Assembly (NCBI RefSeq): GCF_032062105.1
Contig: NW_026932470.1
Coordinates: forward strand, 186,001 to 250,000
Source of the DNA: Saccostrea cucullata
Lineage: Eukaryota
Reading direction: 5' to 3'
Length of the DNA: 64,000 bases
In this document: piece after piece, positions 16,823 through 45,208 of the stretch
Layout: every line of letters starts with the position of its first letter
Position numbering within the stretch: position 1 is the first letter of the stretch
Made by a program: the position numbers and the translations under genes
Notes under the pieces: model-generated
Seen by the model: only the letters and a program-made list of their open reading frames with translations
What the model was told of the DNA's origin: nothing
The model's database searches: none

Positions 16823-18346
16823 ATGGGGAAGCCCATGCCACGCGTACTGGTCCTCCTATTTCTGTTGTCCGTGTTAACGATGGTCGTCATCACTAGATGG
16901 GGTCTCGTCATGGACAACATCTCGACAACAGTCCCCCAGCAAACCCGCCACACCCGAGAATTATTCCAGGCCGCCATCGAGGAATCAGAGAAGAGACATC
17001 AGAACAGGATTGAGGAACTTCAAAGTAGAATCAGAGACCTGGAGGGGATTCTCGATTCCCAGAGGTTACAGCGGGAAAATGTAACGGCCAGCGTGAATGA
17101 GTCCGAGAGTCAAAGTAGTCAAGTACACAAGTACCTCAGTGAGAAACTTCAGGCAGCTGAAATCCTTCATGGAGTGGAAATGAAAAATGAATTTGAGATG
17201 ACGGCATTCAACAGATTTACACTGAACAGGATTTATCTGGTGGACCCAGGGCTGGGGAAGAGAGTAGTGGAGAAACCGATAGGTTCAAAGAGGAGGGACT
17301 TGTACGACGTCATCTCTTATAGTGTCAGCATACTGAATGAACAACGCAAAAACATGTCCAAAATTTTTACTGCTAGTGATTTTATAGAAGGAATATACAG
17401 GACAGACCCTGCTTCTGGGACGCACTATGAACTTTATTTCAGAAATATCAATTCTAAGGAATCGGGGAGATACTCAAAAGTTGCTATTCTTAAACCGTTT
17501 GGTCCATTAATGACTGCCATCAACACCACAGTCAGAACCAGGGAAACCTGGATAAATATCATACTCCCTTTAAAGGGAAGGTTGGATTCTCTGGAAATAT
17601 TTATGAAAAACTTTGTAGATGTTTGCATTGCAATTGACAAGCATATTTACTTAACTATTGTTTACTTTGGGAAGGAGGGGCTGGACACTGTGAAAAATAT
17701 AACTAAAACCGTCAGTCACACCCATGGATATAAGTTCATGAGAGTCATCAACGTGAATGAAGAATTTTCGCGGGGAAGGGGCCTTCAGATTGGAATAGAA
17801 ACCTGGAGGAGTAAGGATGTTGTTATATTCATGTGTGATGTAGATATCATATTTAATGCTGAATTCTTAGAAAGGTGTCGACTTAATACCGAGAAACAGA
17901 AGAAAGTTTACTATCCTATTGTTTTCAGTTTATTTAATCCAAAATTGGTTTATTCTCTAGAAAACAGAACAATTCCGTCCATCAAAAGACAATTAGTGAT
18001 CTCCAAGACGACGGGGTTTTGGAGGGACTTTGGTTACGGAATGACATGCCAGTACCTCTCAGATTTCCAGGCCGTGAAGGGGTTCAGTGAGGGGATAATA
18101 GGCTGGGGTGGGGAGGATGTGTTTTTATACAAAAAGTACGTCCGCAGCAACATGATAGTGGTCAGAGCCACAGATCCAGGGATATTTCACTTGTGGCATG
18201 ACAAGGTGTGTCCGGTCACTTTGTCTGCGGACCAGTACAGGGGTTGTATCCGGTCCAAGTCCCTTAGTGAGGCCTCTCACGCACAGCTCGGTATTCTCGC
18301 CTTCAAGGACCAGATAGACATTCAAAAACTCCAAAAGAAAAAGTAG
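16823..18346 (+). CDS. CSGALNACT: Chondroitin sulfate N-acetylgalactosaminyltransferase (CHGN family), type II Golgi membrane protein, single coding exon
   Basis: 507-aa ORF with N-terminal TM helix and coiled-coil stem. Motifs DFIEGIYRT..GTHYELYF, FSRGRGL, FMCDVD (DxD), YYPIVFSLFNP, GFWRDFGYGMTCQY, GWGGED and HLWHDKVC. Confidence 0.93.
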   Translation: MGKPMPRVLVLLFLLSVLTMVVITRWGLVMDNISTTVPQQTRHTRELFQAAIEESEKRHQNRIEELQSRIRDLEGILDSQRLQRENVTASVNESESQSSQVHKYLSEKLQAAEILHGVEMKNEFEMTAFNRFTLNRIYLVDPGLGKRVVEKPIGSKRRDLYDVISYSVSILNEQRKNMSKIFTASDFIEGIYRTDPASGTHYELYFRNINSKESGRYSKVAILKPFGPLMTAINTTVRTRETWINIILPLKGRLDSLEIFMKNFVDVCIAIDKHIYLTIVYFGKEGLDTVKNITKTVSHTHGYKFMRVINVNEEFSRGRGLQIGIETWRSKDVVIFMCDVDIIFNAEFLERCRLNTEKQKKVYYPIVFSLFNPKLVYSLENRTIPSIKRQLVISKTTGFWRDFGYGMTCQYLSDFQAVKGFSEGIIGWGGEDVFLYKKYVRSNMIVVRATDPGIFHLWHDKVCPVTLSADQYRGCIRSKSLSEASHAQLGILAFKDQIDIQKLQKKK

Positions 18347-23583: not shown

Positions 23584-26500
23584 TTATAACGGTCTGACGA
23601 GGTCCGGGGCCTGGGCCAGCAGAGCGTCCTGTATAGCACTGGTCAGCCCCTTCAGTCTGGACAGTCCCTCCAACAACTCACCAGCCCCGTCTCTGAAACA
23701 AACATATTTTTTCAATTTTTGAGATTAAGGTTTGAGACAAATACCTATTACTTATTTATGCTGAGATTCCGTGTCAGTCAAAATATCCAGCCGAAATAAA
23801 TCCAATAACAGTTTATTGTTTAAAAAAAAAACAACTAAGAAGTCAGTAAATATATAAGGATTTATTTACTATTAAGTCAGTAAATATATAAGGATTTATT
23901 TACTAAGCATCCATAAAAGTGAGATTGTGGAAGGCTTGTGCAAATTTTACGGAAAGATTATGGGTGATATACGCATTTTACAAAGTTCCCGTAAACCGTG
24001 CGGAATTTACGGCAAGTTTGCGTGAGTCCATCCTTCATATTTAAAAAAATGATGTCACCTTGCTTACTGTCATATAATTTTACCAAATCAGACAAGAAAA
24101 AAAAAAAACATCGGTTCTACTTGTATGCGAGATATCATCGATTCGAACCGAAGACAGACTTGCAAGTTGAACAAACCCCTTCCCTCCTAAAAAAGAGAAA
24201 ATATTACAAAACGGAAACAAAGCAGGGATATAGCATCATTTTAGAGAAAAAAGGAGGGGGGGAACTTACTTGCAAAAAAAAAAAAAAAAAAAAAAACAAC
24301 GGGGGGGGGGGGGTAGGTTCCAACTTCTTTCAGTACCAAACTTTATTCAAACACTACTATAAAAACACGTTTTTGACTACTTTTAAACAGAAATATGGAA
24401 CCAGACTTTCAGTGAACATTTCCAACAGCAAAAAGTTAAATTAAAAAAAGTGTGTGTGTGTGTTGGGGGGGAGGGCTCTGTTGCTACGTGCCTGCAAGGG
24501 GTGCCCTTGATTTTTCTACACTAGACACAATGTGTACACCTTCACATAATCAAGAGCAAAGGTGTAAACCAGCTATATCATGCACAGGGCAGTGTTGCTA
24601 AATGCACCAAAAATTCAATAATGGCGAAAATGTCTCGAAGGGTAAAACTGCATTTTTTTCCATTTGAGATTACTGTCAAGTACTAGTATTTGTTAGATCA
24701 ATTAATGATTGTAAATTGTGGTAAGTAATTTTGTCTCATGTTTTATAGCATCTGGTTGGTCAGACCATGGGTTTCCAATAATGGTTTTATAGGGAAAAAA
24801 AAGAAAACTCTTGTTTTTAAACCTTTTTTTAAATATAAATAATCAAAAATAAGCTTTCAGCCGGTTTGGGTGAAAAAATCACCGTATCTTTTTATAAGCA
24901 CCTCCTATTTATACACACTCTCTTTTTATATCAGTAGACAAACTTTATAAATACATTATAGTGATAAACAATGACAACTTCTTAGACCTTTGAAACATGC
25001 AGAAAAACATGTTTTCCGAACTCTGCCAAAGCCCAAGATGATGTGCTTGTATTGACAAGTTCAGAAGCAAGAAATATAAGAAAATAAATTAAATAAGTCA
25101 TCCATATCAGAAAAGAACCATTTGCGTAAAAGCTTTAGAAGTTAAAGAAGAAATTAAACCAGGGAAGTGAAAACTTTGAGGAACATTTGAACAGTTCTGA
25201 GGTACGTACCTGAGAAGTTCACTGCAAGTGTCTGACGGGTTGATAGACATCACATTAAAGATGGCTCTCATTGCATGCATCTTGACATGACTGTTAGGGG
25301 ACTTCAAACATTTGAATATTATCACTGGTAACATGTTTTTCTGAAAGATAAGGCTAATCTAGGTATATTTTTTATCTAACAATTTTTCATCTAAGGCATA
25401 GTGTTGAAAGAATCTTACAATCTTGCTGGCATTTTGCTGAAACCTGGCGAAGTTTGCCAGTCCCCTGGCGGTGTGACTCTGTAAGTCTGGGTTGGTGTCA
25501 TCTCTTTTTAGCAGCTCTCCCAGGCCATCTAATAAATCTTGTAAACCTCCCTAAAAGAATGGATTTTTAGAGAATTTTGAAAGACCAAGACAACATTCAT
25601 TTGAGTGCATCAATCAAAGGGAAGCAATACTGAAGGGATGTACTCAGATTTTGTTATTTAGCTTCATAGACTTCTTCCCTAGCCAAGGGTTTCTGATACG
25701 CTTCTTGTTCTCTCCTCATAAACCCAATGTTAATGAGGAGAACAGGATATCAGAAACCCTTGGCTAGCTAAGATACTCCATAGAGTTAGGGGAATATTAC
25801 CTGGACTTCACTACTTGTAGCCAGGTTAGCTATGAGACAGGCAGTATTACAGAGTAGGGAGAAGATTACCTGGTCATCACTACTTGTAGTCAGGTTAGCT
25901 ATGAGACAGGCAGTATTACAGAGTAGGGAGAAGATTACCTGGTCATCACTACTTGTAGTCAGGTTAGCTATGAGACAGGCAGTATTACAGAGTAGGGAGA
26001 AGATTACCTGGTCATCACTACTTGTAGCCAGGTTAGCTATGAGACAGGCAGTATTACAGAGTAGGGAGAAGATTACCTGGTCATCACTACTTGTAGTCAG
26101 GTTAGCTATGAGACAGGCAGTATTACAGAGTAGGGAGAAGATTACCTGGTCATCACTACTTGTAGCCAGGTTAGCTATGAGACAGGCAGTATTACAGAGT
26201 AGGGAGAAGATTACCTGGTCATCACTACTTGTAGTCAGGTTAGCTATGAGACAGGCAGTATTACAGAGTAGGGAGAAGATTACCTGGTCATCACTACTTG
26301 TAGTCAGGTTAGCTATGAGACAGGCAGTATTACAGAGTAGGGAGAAGATTACCTGGTCATCACTACTTGTAGTCAGGTTAGCTATGAGACAGGCAGTATT
26401 ACAGAGTAGGGAGAAGATTACCTGGTCATCACTACTTGTAGTCAGGTTAGCTATGAGACAGGCAGCATTACAGAGTAAGGAGAAGATTACCTGGTCTTCA

Positions 26501-29500
26501 CTACTTGTAGCCAGGTTAGCTATGAGACAGGCAGCATTACAGAGTAAGGAGAAGATTACCTGGTCTTCACTACTTGTAGCCAGGTTAGCTATGAGACAGG
26601 CAGCATTACAAAGCACTTGCTTGTTTTTGGGATTCCCCCTGATGGCTTTCTGTATGGAACGACCAGCAGTGAAGTCCTCCTATGATCAAATTACAGCACA
26701 CAGATGCTAAAAACCAACTTTACCACAAAATAGCATTTAATTTACCTCTCTAAATTTTTTGATTTTTTTTTTGTGTTTACCTGAACAATCCTATGTTTCT
26801 GCCAGTTTGAACCCAAAGAAAGGAAACAAATGGTTTTTAATGCCACCTCCTGCATCTGTTGATATACATTTATAAAACTTAAAATTATATTTCTAGTTAA
26901 GAAATAACTGGTTAAGAATCTTTGAATATTTGATCACTAATTGTAAAAGTTAAATAGGTTGTTATTTTCATATTTTTTTCGAAAGTAAACAACAACTAAA
27001 CTAAAATCCAGTTTATCATTATTACATGTATGTATCAGCATTATTTAATTAAAACATGCATATAAATATTAGAAAATCAAAATAAAGATAAGTGATCTGG
27101 AACCAAAAAACCCATAGAATATTAAATCCAATAGTTGCAGCATAGGAAAAAGACAGAAAATGACACTCTGCAATATTAAATCAAGCCAAAAATTAAATCA
27201 CTTCAAAAGCCAGTAACTTTTACTGAATTACCGTATAATTTCAATTTAGCAACCACCTTAATTTGTTATTTTTAAAATAGACTTGGATCATAAAAATTGA
27301 ATTTGTTAAAATTTATAGAAAAAAAGGATCTAGAGGGGTGATCAAGGGGGTCTAGACCCCCTCTCCCTGGAATTTGCAGAGTTATTAAATTAATACACTA
27401 AACCAACTAAAAATGACTTTTGACCCCACGTAGAAAATGTAGACCGTTTCTTGAAAATCCAAATCTGTGTTAAGTTGGTATGAAAAGTCCTAGGTGTATG
27501 AAACTTGAAAAGTCAATGACTAACATCCTCCATCATCGAAATAGCTTTTAAACATTTTGGAAAGGATTTTACTCTTTTTTTGCTTGTCAAGAAATTTCTG
27601 GGTTGGAATTTTTTTTACTTTAAGAATGAGGCCCTTTATTTCGCTGGTTGCTAAAGAAATTGTTAAATGGTATTACTAGACTAGTGATAAAACCCATAAA
27701 AAACAAGAATGTAACTCAAACTAAAAGATGAAATTGAGAAAAATTAGAAGCAAATATTTTTGCCAATCACAACAATTCTGTTCACCTTCTGGGTGGATCA
27801 GCATGTTATACTGGATTCACTGGAAATATATGGGGTGTAAATGTAACAAATTTCTAAAATAATTTGTTGAGATCTCTAAAGACCCATGCATACTATTAAG
27901 GAATATAACAGTTCGAATTTAATTGATTCAATTTGATTGATGATAAGAAGCCACTTTCATTTGTTAAGAAAAGTGTGACGTTTAATGGATTCAAAATGGT
28001 AGAATTATGTGCCATGTTATACCTGTTCATCTTCTGAGCCAGCCAGTGAGCATACAGAAGTTAAGACGTTCAGTGGACTCTCTAGGATTTTATTGTGTGT
28101 ACTCGTGTCCTCCGCAATCAAACTGAGTGTGCTCACGGCTACGAGTGACACGGCATTACAGTCAGACGTACAGCTCAGTCGAAGAACAGGCTCCAAGGCC
28201 CCATCCTCCAGGGCTGTCAAAAGAGAAATGAAAATCAAAGGAAAGATGGCTAACCTTATTTCTGTTAATTTTCATCTGACAAAAAGCAAAAGCAAGCATT
28301 AAAGGAACAAAAATTGTACATTTTTTAACTTTCAAAAGTTGTACTTTCAGCATTATTTTCTATTGAATTTTAACTCAGTACCTTGTGAAGTCTTAACATT
28401 TACTTAGTGAAGAATCTGCGATACCTTTACTCTTCAGATCAGGGAGTCTACAGAAGATTTTCAGCGTACTGATCCCCTCCACTAGGGTCTGTTCACAGGT
28501 CAACGCCGTCTTTGACAATATGCTGCAATAACACCATAATTTAGTAAATTTACAGCACAAAATCACTGAAACACAGAATATCATTCTATTCCCATTACAT
28601 CTACTGATTAAAGAGTTCAAAATGCTAAAGTAAATACATCATATATTGACTGTTTAAAACTTTATCTTCGGAAGACCTTGACTGTACAAAATTTTAAAAG
28701 AATTCCGGGTAATAATTGTTCAATAGGTCTGCTAAACGTTCCTACCTACAGATTGCTTTGATGGCCCCAGCATCTGCCAGGTATCTGTGTAGGGGTTGAT
28801 GAGTGGACAGGATCTGAAGACCAGCAATGACCTTACCCTACAGAAAAATAAAGTCCAACTTTACTCTACACAAAAATAAAGTTCAACCTTACCCTACAGA
28901 AAAATAAAGTCCAGGATCAATCTTACCCTACAGAAAAATAAAAGTCGGGGATAACCTTACCCTATACAAAAATAAACTCCAACCTTATCCTACAGAAAAA
29001 TAAAGTCCAACCTTACCCTACACAAAAATAAAGTCCAGGATCAATCTTACCCTACAGAAAAATAAAAGTCGGGGATAACCTTACCCTATACAAAAATAAA
29101 CTCCAACCTTATCCTACAGAAAAATAAAGTCCAACCTTACTCTACAGAAAAATAAACTCCAACCTTACCCTACAGAAAAATAAAAAACTAGAGGTACTGT
29201 GAGCGATGAGCTCACTAAATGATACCCCCGGCCTCCACATAGCTATAATGGCAAAGTCCATGTTTTGCTGTGGCCGTGAAACCCAAAATATGTGTCGGAT
29301 CAAAAAGTAAAATAGGAGGTGCACAATGGCAATACATGTATGTAATAAAGATTCTGTGAAAGTTTCATCAAATTTCATTCAGTGGTATGAGAGGAGTTGC
29401 GGATAAGAGATGGGTACCCCAAAGCCTTACCCTACGGACGGAATACTATATACCCTCCCGCTTTTCAAGCGGGGGGTATAATAAAGTCCAACCTTACTCT

Positions 29501-32500
29501 ACAGTAAAAAAGTCCATTCTTACTCTACAGGGAGATAATGGTCAACATCAACCTTAGACTACTGAAATATAAAGGCCAGCAAATTAAGGGCAATGATAGC
29601 CTAACCTACTGAAAAAAGGCCAGTATCTCAAGGTCATTTATAACCTAGCCCGCTGAAGACTAAAAGGCAACAACTCTAGAAAGTCCAGTTAGAGGACAAT
29701 ATATGCAAAATAAAAAAGATAAAATTTAAACTAGTGTTAATTAAGAAACATACATGTTGACAGAAATAAAAATGATCAAGAATTATGTATAATTTGTTAC
29801 ATTAAGTAATTAAATATTAAATATTGCTGACATACCTGTATAACAGGGTGATCATTCTTTGCTAACATTATTAATGCCTGAACACCACCAAGTTCAACAA
29901 CCTGAAGTACATGAATTCAAAAACTTTGTCAATCTTTAAAATAATACTTGACATTGCATAACATCTTAATTGTTTAGGATTATGTATGTCTGGATATAAT
30001 GAAAGAAAAGATAAATCTAAGTCCTACCTTACAGAGGCCTGTGATTTCTCCACACTGACTGACAAGGTTATTGGCAGCTTCTGATTTAAAATTCTACAAA
30101 TATTTTGTGCACGTAAATAATAGTGGTACCTGAAGCTCTACATTTAATTAATGTAATTTTTAATTATTCAGAATTAAGAAATGAAAGTGACTGTGTGTCA
30201 CATGTGACCAGGTGTGTGGAATGTGTTTAAGGTGCTAGTTACCTGTAGAGGTGAGAGTGACTTTTCAAATGAACACTGTCACATGTGACCAGGTGTGTGG
30301 AATGTGTTTAAGGTGACAGTTACCTGTAGACCAGTAGAGGTGAGATTGATTTTGTGATGAACTCTGTCACATGTGACCAGGTGTGTGGAATGTGTTTAAG
30401 GTGACAGTTACCAGTAGAGGTGAGAGTGACTTTGTGATGAACTCTGTCACATGTGACCAGGTGTTTGGAATGTGTTTAAGGTGACAGTTACCTCTACAGG
30501 TGAGAGTGACTTTGTGATGAACTCTGTCACATGTGACCAGGTGTATGGAATGTGTTTAAGGTGACAGTTACCTCTACAGGTGAGAGTGACTTTGTGATGA
30601 ACTCTGTCACATGTGACCAGGTGTGTGGAATGTGTTTAAGGTGACAGTTACCAGTAGAGGTGAGAGTGACTTTGTGATGAACTCTGTCTCATGTGACCAG
30701 GTGTGTGGAATGTGTTTAATGTGACAGTTACCTGTAGACCAGTAGAGGTGAGAGTGATTTTGTGATGAACTCTGTCACATGTGACCAGGTGTGTGGAATG
30801 TGTTTATGGTAACAGTTACCTTTAAACGAGAGATTGATTTTGTGATGAACTCTGTCACATGTGTCCAGGTGTGTGAAATGTGTTTAAGGTGACAGTTACC
30901 TGTAGAGGTGAGAGTGACTTTTCAAATGAACACTGTCATATGTGACCAGGTGTGTGGAATGTGTTTAAGGTAACAGTTACCTTTAAATGAGAGATTGATT
31001 TTGTGCTGAACACTGTCACATGTGACCAGGTGTGTAGAATATGTTTAAGGTAACAGTTACCTTTAAATGAGAGATTGATTATGTGATGAACTCTGTCATA
31101 TGTGAACAGGTGTGTGGAATGTATTTAAGGTGACAGTTACCTGTAGAGGTGAGAGTGACTTTGTGATGAACTCTGTCACATGTGACCAGGTGTATGGAAT
31201 GTGTTTAAGGTGACAGTTACCTCTACAGGTGAGAGTGACTTTGTGATGAACTCTGTCACATGTGAACAGGTGTGTGGAATGTGTTTAAGGTGACAGTTAC
31301 CTGTAGAGGTGAGAGTGACTTTTCTCATGAACACTGTCACATGTGACCAGGTGTGTGGAATGTGTTTAAGGTAACAGTTACCTTTAAATGAGAGATTGAT
31401 TTTGTGATGAACTCTGTTATACGCAAGTGAGTTAAGGCTACATATAGAGGTTTCTATGCAAAATATCTAATTAAATTCGATAATTGCTCTACCTACCGCA
31501 CAGAAAATGTTAAGACTTGTTTTCTAATACATTCTTGGTACCCAAGACATGCGATAGCCAGTACACATTATTACGTCATATTATGACGTCATCGACCTCT
31601 ACTACACACGTTTATAAGAAACATCAACAAAATCGCTTCGGCGCAAGGGCATACCTTACTTTGTTTTACAGAAACAAGGTATAAAAAGATGCAGGATATT
31701 CCAAGGATTTAAGATATTGCTGCACAAATGTTGGGACTGCAATTTTTTAGTTACTATTCGTGCAGTTTTAAGTTTATATAGGGTAAAAATTCACAGTCCA
31801 GAGTAAGTTTTATAAAATTTTAATTGATTTAGAAAGCGCATAGGATTTGTGCAGCAATTTTATTAGTTTCAAGAATATTCTCCTTAATATTATACACTAA
31901 TTATTTTAAATTAGATAGGATATGCCCTTGCGCCGACGTGGTTTTGTTGATGTATTTTATTACCTTGAATGGGAGAGAATAATGACGTCATAATATGACG
32001 TCATAATGTGTACTAGTATAAATATGCTGTGGGTACTAAGTATGTTTAAGAAAATCAATTTGAACTGTCTCTGTACATAAATTATACAACTTATGAATTT
32101 TTAATTGCTCATTTGCATAAAAATGTCCATGTTTAGCCTTAACTTACTTGCGTATGTGACTAGGTGTGTGGAATGTGTTTAAGGTAACAGTTACCTTTAA
32201 ATGAGAGATTGATTTTGTAATAAACTCTGTCACATGTGACCAGGTGTGTGGAATGTGTTCAAGGTAACAGTTACCTGTAGAGGTGAGATTGATTTTGTGA
32301 TGACCTCTGTTACATGTGACCAGGTGTTTGGAATGTGTTTAAGGAGACAGTTACCTCTACAGGTGAGAGTGACTTTGTGATGAACACTGTCACATGTGAC
32401 CAGGAGTGTGGAATGTGTTTATGGTGACAGTTACCTGTAGAAATAAGAGTGACTTTGTGATGAACTCTGACACATGTGACCAGGTGTGTGGAATGTGTTT

Positions 32501-35500
32501 AAGGTGATAGTTACCTGTAGAGGTGAGAGAGACTTTGTAATAAACTCTGTTACATGTGACCAGGTGTGTGGAATGTGTTTAAGGTGACAGTTACCTGTAG
32601 AGGTGAGAGTGACTTTTCTCATGAACACTGTCACATGTGACCAGGTGTGTGGAATGTGTTTAAGGTAACAGTTACCTTTAAATGAGAGATTGATTTTGTG
32701 ATGAACTCTGTTATACGCAAGTGAGTTAAGGCTACATATGGAGGTTTCTATGCAAAATATCTAATTAAATTCCATAATTGCTCTACCTACCGCACAGAAA
32801 ATGTTAAGACTTGTTTTCTAATACATTCTTGGTACCCAAGACATGCGATAGCCAGTACACATTATTACGTCATATTATGACGTCATCGACCTCTACTACA
32901 CACGTTTATAAGAAACATCAACAAAATCGCTTCGGCGCAAGGGCATACCTTACTTTGTTTTACAGAAACAAGGTATAAAAAGACGCAGGATATTCCAAGG
33001 ATTTAAGATATTGCTGCACAAATGTTGGGACTGCAATTTTTTAGTTACTATTCGTGCAGTTTTAAGTTTATATAGGGTAAAAATTCACAGTCCAGAGTAA
33101 GTTTTATAAAATTTTAATTGATTTAGAAAGCGCATAGGATTTGTGCAGCAATTTTATTAGTTTCAAGAATATTCTCCTTAATATTATACACTAATTATTT
33201 TAAATTAGATAGGATATGCCCTTGCGCCGACGTGGTTTTGTTGATGTATTTTATTACCTTGAATGGGAGAGAATAATGACGTCATAATATGACGTCATAA
33301 TGTGTACTAGTATAAATATGCTGTGGGTACTAAGTATGTTTAAGAAAATCAATTTGAACTGTCTCTGTACATAAATTATACAACTTATGAATTTTTAATT
33401 GCTCATTTGCATAAAAATGTCCATGTTTAGCCTTAACTTACTTGCGTATGTGACTAGGTGTGTGGAATGTGTTTAAGGTAACAGTTACCTTTAAATGAGA
33501 GATTGATTTTGTAATAAACTCTGTCACATGTGACCAGGTGTGTGGAATGTGTTCAAGGTAACAGTTACCTGTAGAGGTGAGATTGATTTTGTGATGACCT
33601 CTGTTACATGTGACCAGGTGTTTGGAATGTGTTTAAGGAGACAGTTACCTCTACAGGTGAGAGTGACTTTGTGATGAACACTGTCACATGTGACCAGGAG
33701 TGTGGAATGTGTTTATGGTGACAGTTACCTGTAGAAATAAGAGTGACTTTGTGATGAACTCTGACACATGTGACCAGGTGTGTGGAATGTGTTTAAGGTG
33801 ATAGTTACCTGTAGAGGTGAGAGAGACTTTGTAATAAACTCTGTTACATGTGACCAGGTGTGTGGAATGTGTTTAAGGTGACAGTAGCCTGTAGAGGTGA
33901 GATTGATTTTGTGATGAAAACTGTCACATGTGACCAGGTGTGTGGAATATGTTTAAGGTAACAGTTACCTTTAAATGAGAGATTGATTTTGTGATGAACT
34001 CTGTTATACGCAAGTGAGTTAAGGCTACATATAGAGGTTTCTATGCAAAATATCTAATTAAATTCGATAATTGCTCTACCTACCGCACAGAAAATGTTAA
34101 GACTTGTTTTCTAATACATTCTTGGTACCCAAGACATGCGATAGCCAGTACACATTATTACGTCATATTATGACGTCATCGACCTCTACTACACACGTTT
34201 ATAAGAAACATCAACAAAATCGCTTCGGCGCAAGGGCATACCTTACTTTGTTTTACAGAAACAAGGTATAAAAAGACGCAGGATATTCCAAGGATTTAAG
34301 ATATTGCTGCACAAATGTTGGGACTGCAATTTTTTAGTTACTATTCGTGCAGTTTTAAGTTTATATAGGGTAAAAATTCACAGTCCAGAGTAAGTTTTAT
34401 AAAATTTTAATTGATTTAGAAAGCGCATAGGATTTGTGCAGCAATTTTATTAGTTTCAAGAATATTCTCCTTAATATTATACACTAATTATTTTAAATTA
34501 GATAGGATATGCCCTTGCGCCGACGTGGTTTTGTTGATGTATTTTATTACCTTGAATGGGAGAGAATAATGACGTCATAATATGACGTCATAATGTGTAC
34601 TAGTATAAATATGCTGTGGGTACTAAGTATGTTTAAGAAAATCAATTTGAACTGTCTCTGTACATAAATTATACAACTTATGAATTTTTAATTGCTCATT
34701 TGCATAAAAATGTCCATGTTTAGCCTTAACTTACTTGCGTATGTGACTAGGTGTGTGGAATGTGTTTAAGGTAACAGTTACCTTTAAATGAGAGATTGAT
34801 TTTGTAATAAACTCTGTCACATGTGACCAGGTGTGTGGAATGTGTTCAAGGTAACAGTTACCTGTAGAGGTGAGAGTGACTTTTGTGATGACCTCTGTTA
34901 CATGTGACCAGGTGTTTGGAATGTGTTTAAGGAGACAGTTACCTCTACAGGTGAGAGTGACTTTGTGATGAACACTGTCACATGTGACCAGGAGTGTGGA
35001 ATGTGTTTATGGTGACAGTTACCTGTAGAAATAAGAGTGACTTTGTGATGAACTCTGACACATGTGACCAGGTGTGTGGAATGTGTTTAAGGTGATAGTT
35101 ACCTGTAGAGGTGAGAGAGACTTTGTAATAAACTCTGTCACATGTGACCAGGTGTGTGGAATGTGTTCAAGGTAACAGTTACCTGTAGAGGTGAGATTGA
35201 TTTTGTGATGAACTCTGTTACATGTGACCAGGTGTGTGGAATGTGTTTAAGGTGACAGTTACCTCTACAGGTGAGAGTGACTTTGTGATGAACTCTGTCA
35301 CATGTGACCAGGTGTGTGAAATGTGTTTAATGTGACAGTTACCTGTAGAGATGAGAGTGACTTTTCAAATGAACACTGTCATATGTGACCAGGTGTGTGG
35401 AATGTGTTTAATGTGACAGTTACCTGTAGAGGTGAGAGTGACTTTGTGATGAACTCTGTCACATGTGACCAGGTGTATGGAATGTGTTTAAGGTGACAGT

Positions 35501-38467
35501 TACCTCTACAGGTGAGAGTGACTTTGTTATGAACTCTGTCACATGTGACCAGGTGTGTGGAATGTGTTTAAGGAGACAGTTACCTGTACACAGGGATCGA
35601 CACGAACTTTAAAACCATAGTTGTCAACAGTGGTAGCCATTAATAATTTCCACTAGCCCTGTTCATGTATTAGTTGTCCAGCAGCCAAAGGCTGGTGGCC
35701 GAGTCGCGAAGCGACGAGGGGGATAGGTGTGGGAGGGGGTTTCCCCCTCCTGCTAGTGAGGATACGGGGGGCCTCCCCCGGGAAATTTTTAAAATAGAGA
35801 TGCCAATTCCTGCATTCTGGCTGTATTTTGGATAAAAATTGTTACTCTATGAAGTATGACGATAAAACATATGTTTGAAATTAAATTGAACAATGATCAG
35901 TTACATTGTGCGTAAATTATAAATATTTTTGTTACTCTGATTGAGTGTTTGGTAAAATTTACAGTAGTCCTGCAGGGTAAGTTTAAAGGCATGTTTAGTA
36001 GCCCGACCTCAATATTCAGTTGTCCCGTGCCAGCGGGCTACTGTAAGTGTCGAACCCTGGTACAGGTGAGAATGACTTTGTGATGAACTCTGTCACATGT
36101 GACCAGGTGTGTGGAATGTGTTTAAGGAGACAGTTACTTCTACAGGTGAGAGTGACTTTGTGATGAACTCTGTCATATGTGACCAGGTGTGTGGAATGTG
36201 TTTAATGTGACAGTTACCTGTAGAGGTGAGAGTGACTTTGTGATGAACTCTGTCACATGTGACCAGGTGTATGGAATGTGTTTAAGGTGACAGTTACCTC
36301 TACAGGTGAGAGTGACTTTGTGATGAACTCTGTAACATGTGACCAGGTGTTTGGAATGTGTTTAAGGAGACAGTTACCTCTACAGGTGAGAGTGACTTTG
36401 TGATGAACTCTGTCACATGTGACCAGGTGTGTGGAATGTGTTTAAGGTGAGTTACCTGTAGAAATGAGAGTGATTTTGTGATGACCTCTGTTACATGTGA
36501 CCAGGTATGTAGAAAGTAATTAAGGTAACAGTTACCTGTAGAGGTGAGAGTGATTTTGTGATGAATTCTGTCACAGGACGACAAGACTCGCACACTCTCT
36601 CTGGATCCTCCAAACCAAGCTGTGGTAAGGGAATCTGTAAAGACAGCATTTGTATATATTCATCAATAATATGTTGACATTGCAACTGTTAAGGCGAGCA
36701 CAGATTAATTTAGATCAGGCTTATCAAACCGCACATGAAATTTGGTGCATCTAGACTCTGATGTCACATGATACTGTATAGCAGGTTAAAATCGCGGTCG
36801 GAAAAGATCGCGATTTGTTCAATTTTCAGCAAATCGAGGTCGTTTGAATTCGCGGAAAGGCAAAAATCATACATTTTTTAATAGTACTTGCCAGCATTTT
36901 TCTTTACGTATATATTGTGTGAACTGTTATTTTCAGTCTATATCTTAGTATTATCTTACGAAAGTCTGTTCATGTATATAGAGTATATCAGACAGGAAAG
37001 GAAAGTCTATATATTGTGTCAATTTTGAGCCTGATTAAATAATAATGAAACACCGGACTGATCCAGATTTGAAGGCAAAATAATGTTACGCATTCAGAAT
37101 ATTTTTTATTTCCAAGTCCAAATAAAAAAAAAATATATAGTAGTCAAATTGTTGAACTTTTAATCATATAATTGAAATTAATTAATTGTCTTTACCCTGT
37201 TTACTTCGAAAGTGCCTTGATTAAAGGTAATGACTGATTGATAGGCATGGGTGAAATTATACAAGCTTGTTTAATTAAATAATTACATTGCACGTCTACT
37301 AGATGGCAAAACTACCGTCATCGTATAGAAATTAATTTAGCAATAAATAAGCTTTACAAAACACCAACAACTACGTGTTTGTATACACTCTCATAATTAT
37401 AATGGTAGTCTACATCTAATTTACAGATGATAATAAAATTTCAGTTTATCCTTATGAACCTTTTCAAGAACTATTCACTGTATGTTGAATTCGCGGAATT
37501 TCTTTTTCCGCGAATATAGCGAATATTAACTCCGCGAGTTAATTTCCTGCTGTACAGTATCATATGTAAGTTGCATTTACCAAAAAGAATCCTGAACAGC
37601 CCTGAAAGTCAACGAAGAACATTTCATATACTATTTATCTCCAAAATATATCCATTAAAAAAATCTAGCGAGTTAACATTTTGTTGAACTTTTCCCATTA
37701 TTCTCACAAGACATAGCTTTAACAAGCGATGCATTGTGGGTCCAGAGTAACTGCGAAAAAAATTTTTTTTTTTTTGATCAATGTGCAAAGTCTTGCTTTA
37801 AGAGCTCGCAGTGAGCTATCATTCATGATTTGAGTACAGAAAGCATTCTCAAAAATTATAAATAACTATCTTAAAACTTAATTCATCACATTGCTGCATG
37901 TACATTTATAAAACTGTCTTTTGTCAAAGAAGCATGTAACAAAACATTTCAAAGCTTGTATACTGCTCACAAAAAAATTGTGGGAAATGTTTCCTCTGTA
38001 TACCAGTGTAAAACTTTGCTTGCCCATTGTGACCCCATCCTATCCCTTGGAGTTATGATCTGAACAAAAATTGTTAATTTACACTGTGTAATAAAGGCCA
38101 TGTTTACCTTTTCATTACAGCACTTGCTGCAAAAAACATTTCCACATTGGCGGCAGTGGTGCTTCCTTCTCAGCTGATTAAACTTGTTTTTACACCACTG
38201 ACAAGCAGACACTTCATCATCTGATATCCATCTGTAAATAAAAAATACTTCTTCAATCAAATTTACATCTTTCTGACTTTCTTTTATGTACAAGTCACTT
38301 GCCAGGAAAAACGAAAGGATGCGACAGATCGAAATTGAAAGTAGGATATGATCTTCTGCTTTGTACCTGTTTTTCAGAAGAGTAAAATTCGTCGAAGAAA
38401 ATACATCAGTTAAACCTTGGACAACTGCCGGAGTAATTAGTCTTCCCTCAAGTTTCACTGATGTCAT
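23584..38467 (-). CDS. FYVE zinc finger + armadillo-repeat protein (about 442 aa, 12 coding exons)
   Basis: Exons 38467-38367, 38231-38108, 36634-36536, 30093-30028, 29901-29836, 28837-28746, 28522-28425, 28213-28023, 26679-26560, 25550-25419, 25340-25210, 23692-23584. All GT-AG, phases match, total 1329 nt. FYVE motifs [15 protein letters not shown] and ERVC; ARM-like segments [44 protein letters not shown] and TARGLANFA. Confidence 0.88.
25679..25767. repeat. Short hairpin or mini-MITE
   Basis: Perfect 20-bp inverted repeat ctagccaagggtttctgata / tatcagaaacccttggctag, plus inner tctcctcat / atgaggaga. Confidence 0.75.
25790..26612 (-). repeat. 12 x 69-bp tandem array made of the 3' end of exon 9 plus its splice donor
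   Basis: Unit translates LCN(A/T)ACLIANL(A/T)TSS(E/D)DQ|VIFSL. Every copy retains CAG|GTAAT and no stop occurs until after copy 12. Confidence 0.95.
28830..29530 (-). repeat. About 14 x 28-bp tandem array made of the exon 6 splice acceptor, interrupted by a HINE
   Basis: Minus-strand unit tggactttatttttctgtag|ggtaaggt; 124-bp higher-order period (ccaggatcaa at 28911 and 29035). Confidence 0.9.
29186..29481 (-). mobile_element. Short HINE/Helentron-like element inserted in the acceptor array
   Basis: aactagaggtactgtgagc..gctcac at one end and tataccctcccgcttttcaagcggggggtataa hairpin at the other. Inserted in the A-run of a unit, with the array resuming afterwards. Confidence 0.7.
31420..32154. 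mobile_element. 735-bp long-TIR MITE, TA target, copy 1
   Basis: TA-cgcaagtgagttaaggcta ... tagccttaacttacttgcg-TA; imperfect inverted arms extend about 300 bp. Confidence 0.88.
32714..33448. mobile_element. 735-bp long-TIR MITE, copy 2
   Basis: Near-identical to copy 1, at the same position within the 80-bp unit. Confidence 0.88.
34007..34741. mobile_element. 735-bp long-TIR MITE, copy 3
   Basis: Near-identical to copies 1 and 2; spacing 1294 and 1293 bp. Confidence 0.88.
35591..36059. mobile_element. Non-autonomous hAT-like element with 5-bp TSD
   Basis: GTACA-cagggatcgacac ... gtgtcgaaccctg-GTACA. Removing it restores the unit sequence acctgtacaggtgag. Confidence 0.85.
36772..37559. mobile_element. 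MITE with TA ends (Tc1/mariner-like)
   Basis: tactgtatagcagg..aatcgcgg ... ccgcgagttaatttcctgctgtacagta; subterminal gaattcgcggaa motifs. Confidence 0.8.
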
Positions 38468-38827: not shown

Positions 38828-41800
38828 ATGGATAACGACTTAGATCTTTCCTCTCTTGTGGAAAAAACTCGTAACATAAATGTACCTATTGGTCACATAA
38901 TTGCTTCTCAGAAATGGAGGAATTCAGAACTGCATTACAGTTTACAGAGTAAGAAAATAAATCAACTTTCACACGAAATGCAGAATTTCTCTGAAGTCAG
39001 ACCACAATATTATGATTCTTCATGCCATTTTGAGAGATTTCTGTTTTCTCTTAGAGGGGCGGGGTGTGTAGGTGGGGTGGGGGTAGTTAACCATGAAAAC
39101 TCCAGGGTTCAAGATTTATGTATTTGAATGAAAACTTCATATAAATATACATCAGATCCAGTACAATCACTAGATTTTGCTACATAGCTAGAATTACCCA
39201 TGTAGCTTTACTTACCTACCCTTTTAAGCATTGGTATGGACTAAAAATCTTTTAATTGGTACTATATTGACTGAATGATATGATTTTGTAGGTAATGTAC
39301 AGGTCCTGTTTGAGGATGATCTTGGAGTTGTAGACTTTTTTCCCTCCAGTAGACTTGGTGTGGTCTACCTCACAGAACCGGACTTAGTGGCATTCTCAGG
39401 CCAAAAGAAGAAGTTAGCTAAGCTAAGAAAGGTTAGAAATCACATGCAAAACAGCAAGAATCCTAAGGTCTCTAATCACCCCTTTTAGAGACTCTATGAA
39501 CAAGTAATAGTCCATGTTTAAATGACTCAGTATATCCTGCTTTAAAAAATAACGGTGCTTTTGAGTAACATATTAGTTCATTGGAATTTCTTAAGGTCAA
39601 GAAATTATTAAAGCCTGGAAATTATTAGGTCGAAATATTTATAGTTTGTAGTATAAAAATTGGCAAGATTTTACATACATGGAGTTCATTTGCATCTTTT
39701 GGATACATTCAACAATTTGATTTTTTTCATCAGTAATTAAAAGAATAACTTGTTTTTGGAATATTTAGAATCCAGTTGTCATCCTGCAAAGATGAATTAA
39801 TACTTGTATTGAGAACTTCTGTTATTTCTATGAAATAAAGATGATGACCCTAAGCTACTCTGATACATACTATTATGATTTAAGGCTGACCGTGTTCAGG
39901 CGGTGGTCCTTGCTGAGAAGACCCCCACCAGCGGTCAGTATTACCCAGAGGTCCAGAAGTTCTGTCTCATGGATCTAGGCTTCTCCGTCATACCAGTACC
40001 AACTCAAAAAGAGGCAGCCTCAATACTATCACAAATGGTTAGTCCAAATTTCTACAAAATAGTAAATAGTAGGGATGTCAAAATATTAATTTTCCGTAGT
40101 CGAACATTCGATTGCATTATTCGAACGATGGTCGACTATTCGGAGAATTTTTAAAGCAGCGTGTTTTTGAAATCTTTTTAAGATAAACTGGAAAATTGAA
40201 ATAAATTGGAAATGGGGAATTGAAAACACCCACTATCCACACCTCCGATGAAATTGTTAAATACTGTTTGTTCCATAAATGCAAATGTTCCTAAGCATTT
40301 GAAATTGAAATCATAGAGTTATAAATATGATTGGTACAAGTCAATTAAATAAATTTCATAGTCCAGTATAGCGTTGCATAATTTACTACGTACAATAACA
40401 AAAAAGTAAGTGATTGAGAAATAATTATCGCGGTATATAATTACTGTATTTTCCATATGTACAATGAGGAAAATTATTTATGTACTGTGACTGTGTTTGA
40501 GCTTTTATTCTTCTGAGGAAGTATACGATACAGCTCTATAGTTTGAGGAAGGACCCTTTTTCAATTTTGAGATAAGAATTTCATTATCACCCCTTTTTTC
40601 CTGCATTTATTTAATATTCGAATGTTGTTTCATTATTCGATCGTCTGTCCATTCGACTGACAGTCGAATAGTCGACTATTCGTTGACATCCCTAGTAAAT
40701 AGGGATTTAGGTTACCTAGTGTTCTGTTGTCATTGGTAAAACTTGGCCCCATAACTTTTTTAATGTAGAAAGATACATTAACTTTATCATGTTCATTTAA
40801 AAACTTCATGACCAAATTTAATTAAGCAAACCCACCTTAAAGCATCCTTACTTAAAAGGGATTCACATAATTTATTTAAATAAATGTACAAGCCTCTTCA
40901 CAAGAGAAGACAATCAGGGGATAAGACTGGTATATTCATTTAGAAATTTCCCTTAGCATCTTCTCACAGGTGTTTGAATTCATGCAAAAAACAAGAATCT
41001 TTTAACTGTATAAATTTCTTGAGGTCTTGGACTTAGTGAAAGTGCTTGATATGTTTAAAATTTACCAGTATTTCCAGAGATACTTTCCTCGTTTGTAGAA
41101 CTTTCTTTTTCAAGAACAGCAGGGCTACAAGCAAGGGTAGATCAAGTCTGTTCAATTAACTAATCTAGAGCAAAGAGTAACAGAATTGTGAAATTTTGCT
41201 TGAAATTCTTATAGCCATAGCAAGCACCGTCATGTGTATTTATGTTTATTCAAATTTGGCTCCAGAGTAGAGATGGTCCACAACAATGTTTTAACTTCAC
41301 AATATCCAAAAAAAAAATCCTCAAATATCCTGCAAGATCAGCAATGCCATAGACTGTTGCATTGATAAAAAAAATAATCATGTTGTAAAATTATTGTTAA
41401 GATATTTCTTAAGACCAAAAAATGCTCATTCAAGTAGGATACTCAACACATGTGACAGGGTACATGGACTTATCATTGTACTAAAACCAACATAACATTG
41501 TTTTTCTTTTCTTTTCTTTTTAGCTCACCTCAACGAAGTTGGGGGGAGCTTATGTGATACCCTCGGCGTCGGCGTCCCGGGTTAAGGTTAAGTTTTTTGG
41601 AGCAGTTTTCTTTTTAAGTACTTCTATGTCCTATATTGATTAGACATGCATGGAAGATGTTTCTAATGTGTTTCATTGTAGCAGTCAAAGTTTCAGATGC
41701 TGCAATTTCAGCAAAGGAATGACCAGGTTAATGTTTTTGGTGCAGGTTAACATTTTTGGTGCAGTTTTTGGTGTAGGTCTCATATCCAAGTAACTATAAG

Positions 41801-43381
41801 CCCTATGTTGACCAAACTTACACGGATGGTACATCTTAGGATGCATACTACCAGACTTGCTTCAGATGCTGAATCTGACCTACATTTTCCGGTTGAGTGA
41901 ACAGGTTAAAGTTTTTGGTGCAGATTTCATTTCGAAGATACTAGGAGCCCTATAATGACCAAACTTGCATGGATGGTACATCTAAGGGTGCATTCTACTA
42001 GGCTGGCTTCAGAAGCTGAATCTGACCTACATTTTCCGGATTAGTGAAAAGGTTAGTTTTTTATACAGGTTTCATTTCCAAGTAACTTTGAGCTCTACAT
42101 TGAACAAACTTGCATGGATGATACATCTTAGGATGCACACTAATGGACTTGCTTCAGATGCTGAATTCGACATACATTTTCCAGATAATAGACCTCGTAA
42201 AAGTTATGGGTGCAGGTCTATCACCAAGAAACTATAAGGCTTATATAAACCAAAGTTGCACAAATGATGCATCAAGGGATAAAAACTCTCAATCTTGCTT
42301 CAGATGCTGGATTTTAATTACATTTTCATGATGAAGAACTAGTTTTAAGTTTTTATATAGGTCTATTCCAAAGTATCAAAATTGCATAAATTTTGCTTTT
42401 TTGGATGTACACTTTTTGTTGGTTAATTGTGTGACTTAATTTGCCTTACTTAAAGACAACATTCATTGAGGTGAGCTCTGTAATCTCTGATTACTTATGT
42501 TTTTTTATGGAGGAAATTTTTTTTAATAGCTAGCATGCATAATTTTAAGCATGTGTATGCCAGTCAGGAGTTCCTTATTGGTAGCTTTCATTGTTTTCTA
42601 GGTGGTCAGTGAGAGCCACACAAATACCAATCCATTTCTGAGGAGGAAGATCTATCCTTTAGATGAAGCCTTACTGGCCACTGTCAAATGTATTCCAGGC
42701 CTTGGGGGCGTCAAAGCTCGGGCTCTGCTGGAGGGATTGGGAAGTAAGAGATTATGTTTCAAGACTTAAATGTGAATTTTGAAGTAGTTGGTGCTGATGT
42801 TGCATGTCCTCAAATCTTGTACATTGATATTCAGTATTGAACATGTGTAGAAACACTCACTGTACAGTACAATTGAGTGTAATATGTCACAGGTGAGCCT
42901 TGTGGTACATGGCCTATTTAGCACCTGTCATTTTTTGATAGACCGTGTTCATACATAACATTTATAATGTTAAAGAAAGTAAGGGCATCTATATATATAA
43001 GACATATATATGAACCGGAGGAGAAATTGTCAAATAATTAGAGCTGTAAGTGTTTATAATAATCTCATATTAAAGTTCTTTTTATAGAAGCATAACAATA
43101 TAAATTCTGATTTGATTTAATTGCCTATAACCTTCAAATTTTTCACCAACATACATGTGTCATTAGTGAGGTGTGCAGCTGAACCATTTATTCCCATGAG
43201 TGACATAAAGTTGTTGCACTTAACAAAGTAAAAGTTTCCTGCATAACCTTGCAGGTGTTGATAGAGCATGCTTTAACTGCATGTTATTTCATATTGTGTA
43301 GTCTTTGAATTTAGCTCAGTTGATCCTTCTTTATTTCTAGGTATTGAAAACATATGCAGTGCCTCAGATCAGGTAAACATC

Positions 43382-43586: not shown

Positions 43587-44975
43587 TGCCCTTTTCTAAG
43601 GGGAGATAATCATGAATTTGTTAAAAATTAATGGCATTTTTAAAAAATCTTCTTCTCCAGAACCGCTGGGTCAGGAAAGATGAAACTCATGTGGAAGCAT
43701 CCTCAGTTAGTGTAGATTCAAGTTTGTTCAAATCGTGAACCCAGGGGCAAGGGTGGGGTCAAAATGGCCGACCTAAGTTTTACATAGGAATATATAGGAA
43801 AAATCTTTAAAAATCTTCTTCTCCAGTACCACTGGGCCAGGAAAGATAAAATCATGTGGAATCAGCCTCAGGTAGTGTAGATTCAAGTTTATTCAAATCA
43901 TGACCCCCGGGGTAAGGGTGGGGCCAAAATGGCCGACCCAAGTTTTACATAGGAATATATAGGAAAAATCTTTAAAAATCTTCTTCTCCAGAACCACTGG
44001 CCAAAGAAAGATGAAACTCATGTGGAATCATCCTCAGGTAGTGTAGATTTAAGTTTGTCCAAATCATGACCCCCGGGGCAAGGGTGGGGCCAAAATGGCC
44101 GACCCAAGTTTAACATAGGAATATATAGGAAAAATCTTTAAAAATCATCTTCTCCAGAACCACTGGGCCAGGAAAGATGAAACTCATGTGGAATCATCCT
44201 CAGGTAGTGTAGATTCAAGTTTGTTCAAATAATGACCCCCGGGGCAAAGGTGGGGCCAAAATGGCCGACCCAAGTTTTACTTAGGAATATATAGGAAAAA
44301 TCTTTAAAAATCCTCTTCTCCAGAACCACTGGGCCAGGAAAGATGAAACTCATGTGGAATCATCCTCAGGTAGTGTAGATTCAAGTTTGTTCAAATCATG
44401 ACCCCCGGGGGTAGGGTGGGGCCAAAATGGCCGACCCAAGTTTAACATAGGAATATATAGGAAAAATCTTTAAAAATCATCTTCTCCAGAACCACTGGGC
44501 CAGGAAAGATGAAACTCATTTGGAATCATCCTCAGGTAGTGTAGATTCAAGTTTGTTCAAATAATGACCCCCGGGGCAAAGGTGGGGCCGAAATGGCCGA
44601 CCCAAGTTTTACTTAGGAATATATAGGAAAAATCTTTTAAAATCTTCTTCTCCAGAACCACTGGGCCAGGAAAGATGAAACTCATGTGGAATCATCCTCA
44701 GGTAGTGTAGATTCAAATTTGTTCAAATCATGACCCCCGGGGCTAGGGTGGGGCCAAAATGGCCGACCCAAGTTTTACATAGGGATACATAGGGAAACCT
44801 TTTAAAATCTTCTTTTCAAGTACTTCAAAGCTATGATTAGTGATATTTATATGGAATCATCCTCAGGTAGTGTAGATTCTAGTTTGTTCAAATGATGAAC
44901 GCCTGGAGGGGGGGGGGGTGGAGTAAATTCAAGCCTGATGTGCTCAGGTGAGCGCTGTGGCCCCTGGGCCTCTTG

Positions 44976-45007
<32 letters not shown>

Positions 45008-45053
45008 GTTTCTGATCAAAATTTGTCCGTCGTCTGTCGTTGTCGTCGTTGTT

Positions 45054-45098
<45 letters not shown>

Positions 45099-45147
45099 AA
45101 GAACCACTGGGCCGATTTCAACCAAACTTGCTACAAAGTATCCTTGA

Positions 45148-45208
<61 letters not shown>

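What the first reader, a model, noticed from the sequence alone, without database searches (positions are those of the whole stretch)
25790..26679. In-frame ladder of 12 splice donors: possible variable-length ARM protein
Seen: the unit is 69 nt, exactly 23 codons, and stop-free across all 12 copies. Each copy ends in a phase-0 CAG|GTAAT donor compatible with the exon at 25550. Exon 9 could therefore be 120 + 69n nt (n = 0-11, maximum 879 nt), adding repeats of [23 protein letters not shown]. Established: ARM helix 3 with its conserved Asn (here ANLA) lines the ligand groove. Inference: donor choice would multiply this helix. Copies nearest the exon keep NAA/SED and distal ones mostly carry NTA/SDD, recording the order of expansion.
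Basis: partly seen in the sequence, partly recalled or inferred. Interest (0 to 1): 0.8.

Follow-up and report, generated by a model that had tools for sequence, protein, structure and literature searches.

The report
Splice-donor minisatellite in an oyster intron
A 69-base piece spanning the end of an exon and its splice signal has been copied 12 times head-to-tail into the next intron of a hooded-oyster gene; this is a known kind of repeat ("mirage" or F7-type minisatellite), most likely spliced out, and I found no evidence that it makes a variable-length protein.

Summary
There are 12.0 copies of a 69-nt unit (51 nt of exon end plus 18 nt of intron). Each copy carries a phase-0 CAG|GTAAT donor, and the coding frame stays open through all copies.

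The window is Saccostrea cucullata. The gene is LOC134235190, a 467-aa FYVE plus armadillo-repeat protein. A GT-AG splice walk over the window reproduces RefSeq XP_062573290.1 exactly only when the first donor (26560) is used. That is the only isoform in the protein collection. Thirty orthologues from molluscs, annelids and echinoderms keep ...[17 protein letters not shown]|G... without any insertion.

S. echinata and Ostrea edulis have a single donor at this junction, so the array is young and lineage-specific. The open frame is about what chance gives (roughly 1 in 5). Copy variants are 3 nonsynonymous to 1 synonymous.

In the same transcript, intron 3 holds at least 22 identical decoy donors that would all bring in stop codons. 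The gene is nevertheless under strong purifying selection (dN/dS 0.04), so this spliceosome must pick the exon-proximal donor there.

This type of repeat is already described (amphioxus "mirages", human F7, PDGF, LMNB2; IFI6 and CBS use a few extra donors). This scan has also met it several times on other DNA of this genome.

The parts
23584..38467 (-). Coding span of Saccostrea cucullata LOC134235190, a FYVE + armadillo-repeat protein of 467 aa with 13 coding exons
   Evidence: The exact GT-AG splice walk reproduces P0040 = XP_062573290.1. Pfam gives FYVE 71 bits and Arm 37.6 bits. AF2 pLDDT is 91 and Foldseek hits ARM proteins at E about 1e-11.
26560..26679 (-). Coding exon 10 (120 nt, phase 0 at both ends, aa 305-344). 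Its last 51 nt form the exonic part of repeat unit 1.
25783..26610 (-). 69-nt x 12 tandem array. Unit 1 straddles the exon 10/intron 10 boundary and units 2-12 are intronic.
   Evidence: TRF; the unit table; the array occurs only at this locus in the 1.17-Gb assembly
26558..26559 (-). GT of the authentic (first) donor, CAG|GTAATC, the one used in the RefSeq product
25799..26490 (-). Eleven reiterated pseudo-donors. Their last exonic nt would be 26491, 26422, 26353, 26284, 26215, 26146, 26077, 26008, 25939, 25870 and 25801.
25551..26559 (-). Intron 10, 1009 nt. Of this, 759 nt are extra repeat copies and the remaining 250 nt or so match the 274-nt intron of S. echinata in size.
25419..25550 (-). 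Coding exon 11 (aa 345-388), the acceptor partner of the donor ladder
30196..36575 (-). Context: 80-nt arrays in intron 3 that re-copy the last 39 nt of exon 3 plus its donor. They hold 22 exact CAGGTAAC decoys, are out of frame, and bring in stop codons.
28830..29185 (-). Context: 28-nt array that re-copies the acceptor of exon 6 plus its first 8 exonic nt

Best explanation
This is a young, lineage-specific minisatellite of the 'mirage' or F7-IVS7 type in intron 10 of S. cucullata LOC134235190. A 69-nt segment straddling the exon 10/intron 10 boundary was duplicated in tandem. The breakpoints share a CTC microhomology, which suggests replication slippage. The duplicate was then amplified and homogenised by unequal exchange to 12 copies. 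The authentic donor stays attached to the intact exon, so the spliceosome takes the most upstream (exon-proximal) donor. The eleven downstream copies are removed as part of a 1009-nt intron, and the protein stays at 467 aa. That the unit is 23 stop-free codons is a by-product of its origin (51 of the 69 nt are coding sequence) and of chance. Shown here: the structure, its absence in two relatives, the identity of the first-donor product with the RefSeq protein, and the conservation of the junction. Inferred: the mechanism of origin, and that pseudo-donors are silent in vivo.
For: - **Array anatomy:**
- **First donor in the annotated product:** an exact 13-exon splice walk equals XP_062573290.1 using donor 26560. 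That protein and the S. echinata orthologue are the only two members of their 90% cluster, and both are 467 aa.
- **No protein carries the repeat:** searches covering 52-817 aa found none.
- **Relatives lack the array:** S. echinata has one donor and a 274-nt intron 10. O. edulis has one donor and a 527-nt intron 10.
- **Junction conserved:** it is insertion-free in 30 orthologues apart from one likely mis-predicted Apostichopus model (P0025), with N329, C332, N336, L337, A338 and Q344 invariant.
- **Gene under selection:** dN/dS is 0.04 at dS 0.375. The copies are 96.5% identical on average, and interior copies differ at no more than two positions.
- **No constraint on the copies:** variants are 3 nonsynonymous to 1 synonymous.
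- **Internal control:** intron 3 carries 22 exact decoy donors at 80-nt spacing. An in-frame stop lies 14 codons past exon 3, so first-donor choice is obligatory there.
- **Period not selected for frame:** of four donor-side arrays in this gene in two oysters (69, 80, 52 and 26 nt), only one has a period divisible by 3.
- **Literature:** F7, PDGF, LMNB2 and the amphioxus mirages use only the authentic site (PMC1557585, PMC3087553, PMC3902484).
Against: - No RNA reads could be laid.
- A RefSeq model may rest partly on protein homology.
- All 12 donors are equal in intrinsic strength, and in-frame products would escape nonsense-mediated decay.
- In human IFI6 (12-nt unit) and CBS, the two pseudo-sites nearest the authentic donor are also used (PMC1557585).
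- If intron definition prevailed, the last donor would restore the ancestral intron size of about 250 nt.
Confidence: 0.77

Rival explanations
1. Splicing is leaky. The first donor dominates, but the second (and perhaps third) pseudo-donor is used at a low level. This would give minor mRNAs with +69 or +138 nt and proteins with one or two extra [23 protein letters not shown] units, as non-adaptive noise.
For: Donors are identical and extensions are in frame and stop-free, so there is no decay filter. [quoted passage not shown] Copy 2 is 100% identical to copy 1.
Against: Arrays with comparable spacing (F7 37 bp, PDGF 81 bp, LMNB2 100 bp) are silent. No isoform is annotated or present in the protein collection. 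The insertion would fall in a loop next to invariant residues.
Confidence: 0.15
2. One reading: regulated donor choice makes a functional ARM protein of variable length, multiplying the helix-3 surface, with copy number polymorphic between animals.
For: The frame is open across 12 copies, the donors are phase-0, and the repeated piece is an H3-like helix with the conserved Asn.
Against: - The open frame is expected by chance at about 0.2.
- Copy variants are mostly nonsynonymous.
- A 23-aa unit is not an ARM repeat (about 42 aa, three helices). The read-through folds with low confidence, pLDDT 53 and pTM 0.28.
- The unit's helix [16 protein letters not shown] is very hydrophobic (Kyte-Doolittle mean about 2, computed by hand).
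- The array is absent from two relatives, and the junction is invariant across phyla.
- Sibling arrays in the same gene are out of frame.
Confidence: 0.03
3. The array, or its copy number, is an assembly artefact.
For: Tandem repeats are error-prone in assemblies. The genome is fragmented (23,869 contigs). No independent reads were laid.
Against: The copies carry an ordered pattern of variants with distinct edge copies, which is typical of real arrays. The same genome and O. edulis carry many analogous arrays. The contig is continuous, with no N in the window.
Confidence: 0.03

Closest known systems
Human F7 intron 7 37-bp VNTR (Borensztajn et al. 2006, PMC1557585)
   Same: The first monomer spans the exon/intron boundary. 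The authentic donor is followed by identical pseudo-donors. Only the most upstream one is used physiologically, which the authors explain by 5'->3' scanning.
   Different: The F7 unit holds only 4 exonic nt, is not a multiple of 3, and has 5-9 copies. The unit here holds 51 exonic nt, is in frame, and has 12 copies in a mollusc. Silence of the pseudo-donors is not shown here.
Amphioxus 'mirages' (Adh3, troponin C, globins BflGb6/9, PGBD5; PMC3087553, PMC3902484)
   Same: These are minisatellite-like tandem duplications of exon/intron boundaries, 10-160 bp, on the donor or the acceptor side, and several can occur per gene. They show concerted evolution with divergent edge copies, and mRNA splicing is normal.
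   Different: The phylum differs (cephalochordate versus bivalve). I found no paper describing them in oysters in the held library.
Human IFI6 (6-16) 12-nt minisatellite and the CBS intron 13 VNTR
   Same: The boundary-spanning minisatellite provides many donors. In IFI6 the unit is in frame, so extra donors add amino acids.
   Different: In those genes the two proximal pseudo-sites are shown to be used (as cited in PMC1557585). The units are much shorter than the 69 nt here, and use is untested here.
Human LMNB2 (100 bp) and PDGF (81 bp) boundary minisatellites
   Same: The unit size is similar to 69 nt, and only the authentic donor is used (as cited in PMC1557585).
   Different: These are vertebrate genes, and I did not check frame or exonic content.

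Membership tests
Exon/intron-boundary minisatellite ('mirage' / F7-IVS7 type) | Head-to-tail array of a 10-160-bp unit | tested here: met
   69 nt x 12.0, 98% matches, no indels
Exon/intron-boundary minisatellite ('mirage' / F7-IVS7 type) | The first unit spans an authentic exon/intron boundary, so the real splice site is reiterated in the intron | tested here: met
   Unit 1 is the last 51 nt of exon 10 plus 18 nt of intron. The exon boundary is fixed by an exact match to XP_062573290.1.
Exon/intron-boundary minisatellite ('mirage' / F7-IVS7 type) | The mature mRNA uses the authentic site and the pseudo-sites are silent | not testable with these tools
The support is indirect: a single 467-aa RefSeq product, no longer isoform in the collection, and obligatory first-donor use in intron 3.
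Exon/intron-boundary minisatellite ('mirage' / F7-IVS7 type) | Concerted evolution with divergent edge copies, and a young, lineage-specific origin | tested here: met
   Interior copies 4-11 are nearly identical. Copy 12 keeps the ancestral intron letters also seen in S. echinata. The array is absent in S. echinata and O. edulis.
Exon/intron-boundary minisatellite ('mirage' / F7-IVS7 type) | Copy-number polymorphism or instability | not tested
   Only one copy of the locus is in the assembly, and no reads were laid.
Multi-donor minisatellite that diversifies a protein (IFI6 type) | Unit length a multiple of 3 and stop-free in the coding frame | tested here: met
Multi-donor minisatellite that diversifies a protein (IFI6 type) | Transcripts that use more than one of the repeated donors | not testable with these tools
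   There is no RNA evidence, and no such protein in the searches.
Armadillo-repeat protein with FYVE finger | FYVE zinc finger and ARM repeats above the Pfam thresholds, with an ARM superhelix fold | tested here: met
   FYVE scores 71.1 bits against a cut-off of 27.8, and Arm scores 37.6 against 20.6. AF2 pLDDT is 91. Foldseek hits designed ARM proteins, importin-alpha, Vac8 and beta-catenin at E 1e-11 to 1e-9.

The most novel reading that the evidence does not exclude
The ladder is really used. S. cucullata would then make a set of LOC134235190 mRNAs differing by 69-nt steps, and so FYVE-ARM proteins with 1-11 extra 23-aa helix units. The range would be set by a copy number that varies between animals. 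That would be a natural case of a minisatellite turning intron sequence into repeat protein sequence.
Probability: 0.04. Interest if true: 0.6.

Novelty: new member of a known kind. Interest (0 to 1): 0.25.

Why it matters
Taken alone this is an ordinary, probably silent intronic minisatellite, and the gene model is unaffected. It has two modest uses. First, it is a clean natural test of 5' splice-site choice in a mollusc: twelve identical, in-frame donors 69 nt apart, whose products would not be decayed, so even rare use would be visible. Second, it adds to the evidence that boundary-spanning "mirage" repeats are frequent in oysters. They arise repeatedly in this one gene: three junctions in S. 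cucullata, two in O. edulis, and none in S. echinata. Why they arise so often at junctions is still unexplained.

Tried and rejected
- **RNA evidence.** The look-up of sequencing runs listed 22 runs, each holding only 5-7% of the words.
- **Transcript-derived protein fragments.** I looked for Saccostrea fragments that would show the exon 10-11 junction. None are on record, and the look-up of encoding contigs has no record for P0040.
- **Pfam on the read-through.** This gave only spurious repeat-driven hits such as PrlF and Glyco_hydro_100, which I disregarded.
- **AF2 of the read-through alone.** Confidence was low (pLDDT 53), so it is not informative beyond showing helices of about 18-20 aa.
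- **The joined spliced model.** I did not build or search it. Exons were handled by reference, and the splice walk returned coordinates only.
- **The big representative search.** I did not use it, because the word searches had already settled the family and the absence of longer isoforms.
- **A mobile-element origin.** Rejected: the unit is purely local sequence and occurs only at this locus.
Full report
**Observation**

Tandem Repeats Finder reports one array at 25782-26610 with period 69, 12.0 copies, 98% matches and no indels. Read on the minus strand, the unit is TGTAAT...GACCAG|GTAATCTTCTCCYTACTC. Translating 26679-25790 gives 296 codons with no stop: [23 protein letters not shown], then [17 protein letters not shown] and VIFSLL repeated.

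A unit table puts the last exonic base of the twelve donors at 26560, 26491... 25801. The 9-mer is CAG|GTAATC eleven times and CAG|GTAATA once. Possible exon lengths are 120+69n, up to 879, and all are phase 0.

**What the gene is**

A word search with the read-through found a family of proteins of about 467 aa carrying FYVE and Arm domains. It occurs in oysters, gastropods, a chiton, an annelid and echinoderms. The best hit was Saccostrea echinata LOC133204408. Its 90% cluster has one other member, S. cucullata XP_062573290.1 (LOC134235190, 467 aa).

All exon pieces of the window are 100% identical to that protein. A codon-by-codon GT-AG walk over the minus strand reproduces it exactly with 13 coding exons. 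In that walk:
- Exon 10 is 26679-26560 (120 nt, phase 0 at both ends).
- Intron 10 is 1009 nt.
- Exon 11 is 25550-25419.

So the window is S. cucullata, and the annotated product uses the first donor of the ladder. The walk returned coordinates only. I did not build or search a joined spliced sequence.

Pfam gives FYVE at 71 bits and Arm at 37.6 bits. AlphaFold2 with 30 orthologues gives pLDDT 91. Foldseek matches designed armadillo proteins, importin-alpha, Vac8 and beta-catenin.

Helix 324-337 ([14 protein letters not shown]) is followed by a loop at 338-347 that holds the exon 10/11 junction, Q344|G345. N329, C332, N336, L337, A338 and Q344 are invariant in the 30 orthologues.

**Is the array old or shared?**

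It is neither.
- The S. echinata locus (L001) has no tandem repeat at this junction. Exon 10 ends CAG|GTATCATTCCCCTTACTC and intron 10 is 274 nt.
- Ostrea edulis (L008) also has a single donor, and its intron 10 is 527 nt.
- In the window, 759 of the 1009 intronic bases are extra copies. The remaining 250 or so match the ancestral intron size.
- Copy 12 keeps intron letters (ATTCCCC) that are also seen in S. echinata, the usual unhomogenised edge copy.
- The unit boundaries share CTC in the S. echinata exon (GTGCTC|TGTAAT) and intron (TTACTC|AGATT). This hints at a slippage-type first duplication (this is inference).
- In the 1.17-Gb assembly the unit occurs only at this locus.

**Is the open frame meaningful?**

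Fifty-one of the 69 nt are coding sequence and so are open by descent. Only two things had to fit: the period (1/3) and six intronic codons (about 0.64 at 35% GC). That is roughly one chance in five.

Other results agree with chance:
- One + strand frame is open through the array as well.
- The variable columns among copies are three nonsynonymous (A>T, A>T, E>D) and one synonymous, as expected without protein-level constraint.
- Four donor-side boundary arrays exist in this gene in two oysters: 69 and 80 nt in S. cucullata, 52 and 26 nt in O. edulis. Only one has a period divisible by three.

**Which donor is used?**

I could not observe this directly. The look-up of sequencing runs listed 22 runs with small shares.

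The indirect evidence is as follows.
1. The only protein on record for the locus is the first-donor product. Searches covering 52-817 aa found no sequence with the DQ-VIFSLL junction.
2. The junction region is insertion-free in the 30 orthologues across three phyla, apart from one likely mis-predicted Apostichopus model, P0025.
3. There is an internal control in the same pre-mRNA. Intron 3 (6442 nt) is filled with 80-nt units copying the last 39 nt of exon 3 plus its donor. It holds 22 exact CAGGTAAC decoys, and an in-frame stop lies 14 codons past the exon.
4. The gene has dN/dS of 0.04 at dS 0.375 against S. echinata. A working mRNA therefore requires the exon-proximal donor to be chosen over many identical decoys. 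The same rule applied to intron 10 gives the 120-nt exon.
5. The read-through peptide folds with low confidence (pLDDT 53, pTM 0.28). A 23-aa unit is also not an ARM repeat.

**Comparison with what is known**

Minisatellites whose first unit spans an exon/intron boundary are already described.
- **Human F7 intron 7 (37 bp):** only the most upstream donor is used, and the pseudo-sites are functional but silent (PMC1557585).
- **PDGF (81 bp) and LMNB2 (100 bp):** only the authentic site is used. **IFI6 and CBS:** the two proximal pseudo-sites are also used. All of these are as cited in PMC1557585.
- **Amphioxus "mirages":** described in Adh3, troponin C, globins and PGBD5, on either side of an exon, with normal splicing and divergent edge copies (PMC3087553, PMC3902484).

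The present array meets the structural criteria of this kind. I found no paper in the held library that describes them in oysters. Earlier notes of this scan report the same type at several other places in this genome. I checked the literature they name, but not their genome-wide counts.

**Verdict**

Low-level use of the second or third donor remains plausible (about 15%), because such products would be in frame and stable. This is a new member of a known kind, of low to moderate interest.

Noticed in passing
window 30196-36575 (minus strand, intron 3): 80-nt arrays re-copy the last 13 codons of exon 3 ([13 protein letters not shown]) plus its donor. They hold 22 exact CAGGTAAC copies, and the period is not a multiple of 3, with stops in frame. 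This served as my internal control for first-donor choice.
   Followed up: partly
window 28830-29185 (remnants up to about 29530), minus strand, intron 5: A 28-nt array re-copies the acceptor of exon 6 (TTTTTCTGTAG) plus its first 8 exonic nt (GGTAAGGT). An unrelated element of about 300 bp interrupts it at about 29200-29500.
   Followed up: partly
L008:3281-4154 and L008:9216-9527 (Ostrea edulis orthologue): Independent boundary arrays occur in the same gene of another genus. One is 52 nt x 16.8 on the exon 3 donor, the same junction as in S. cucullata but with a different unit. The other is 26 nt x 12 on the exon 8 donor, with some copies mutated to CAAGTA. S. echinata has none in this gene. 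The recurrence at junctions is unexplained.
   Followed up: partly
L008:10071-14335: A 52-nt array of about 67 copies lies in intron 8 of the O. edulis orthologue. Its unit (…ACTTAGATGTAGGATGTT…) loosely resembles the acceptor and start of exon 9 (CAACAG|ATGCAGGAGGTG), so it may be a decayed acceptor-side array.
   Followed up: no
L001:125-362 (S. echinata, neighbouring PND-domain gene on the other strand): A 39-nt x 6.2 array contains ACTTAC, which is GTAAGT on the gene's strand. It may be another donor-boundary array.
   Followed up: no
window 25783-26610, inside each 69-nt unit: Besides the donor, each unit carries a pyrimidine-rich stretch ending in CATAG, followed directly by CTAAC (a branch-point-like motif). 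The array therefore also reiterates acceptor-like signals.
   Followed up: no
window 16823-18346 (+): A 507-aa open frame carries a chondroitin N-acetylgalactosaminyltransferase domain (PF05679, 284 bits). It looks like a neighbouring gene with one large exon.
   Followed up: partly
window 43643-46324 and 41763-42371: 166-nt satellite arrays (7.6 and 5.6 copies) and a 147/292-nt repeat lie upstream of the gene. I did not examine them.
   Followed up: no
They lie in intron 8. I worked beside them and masked them in my scripts.
   Followed up: no
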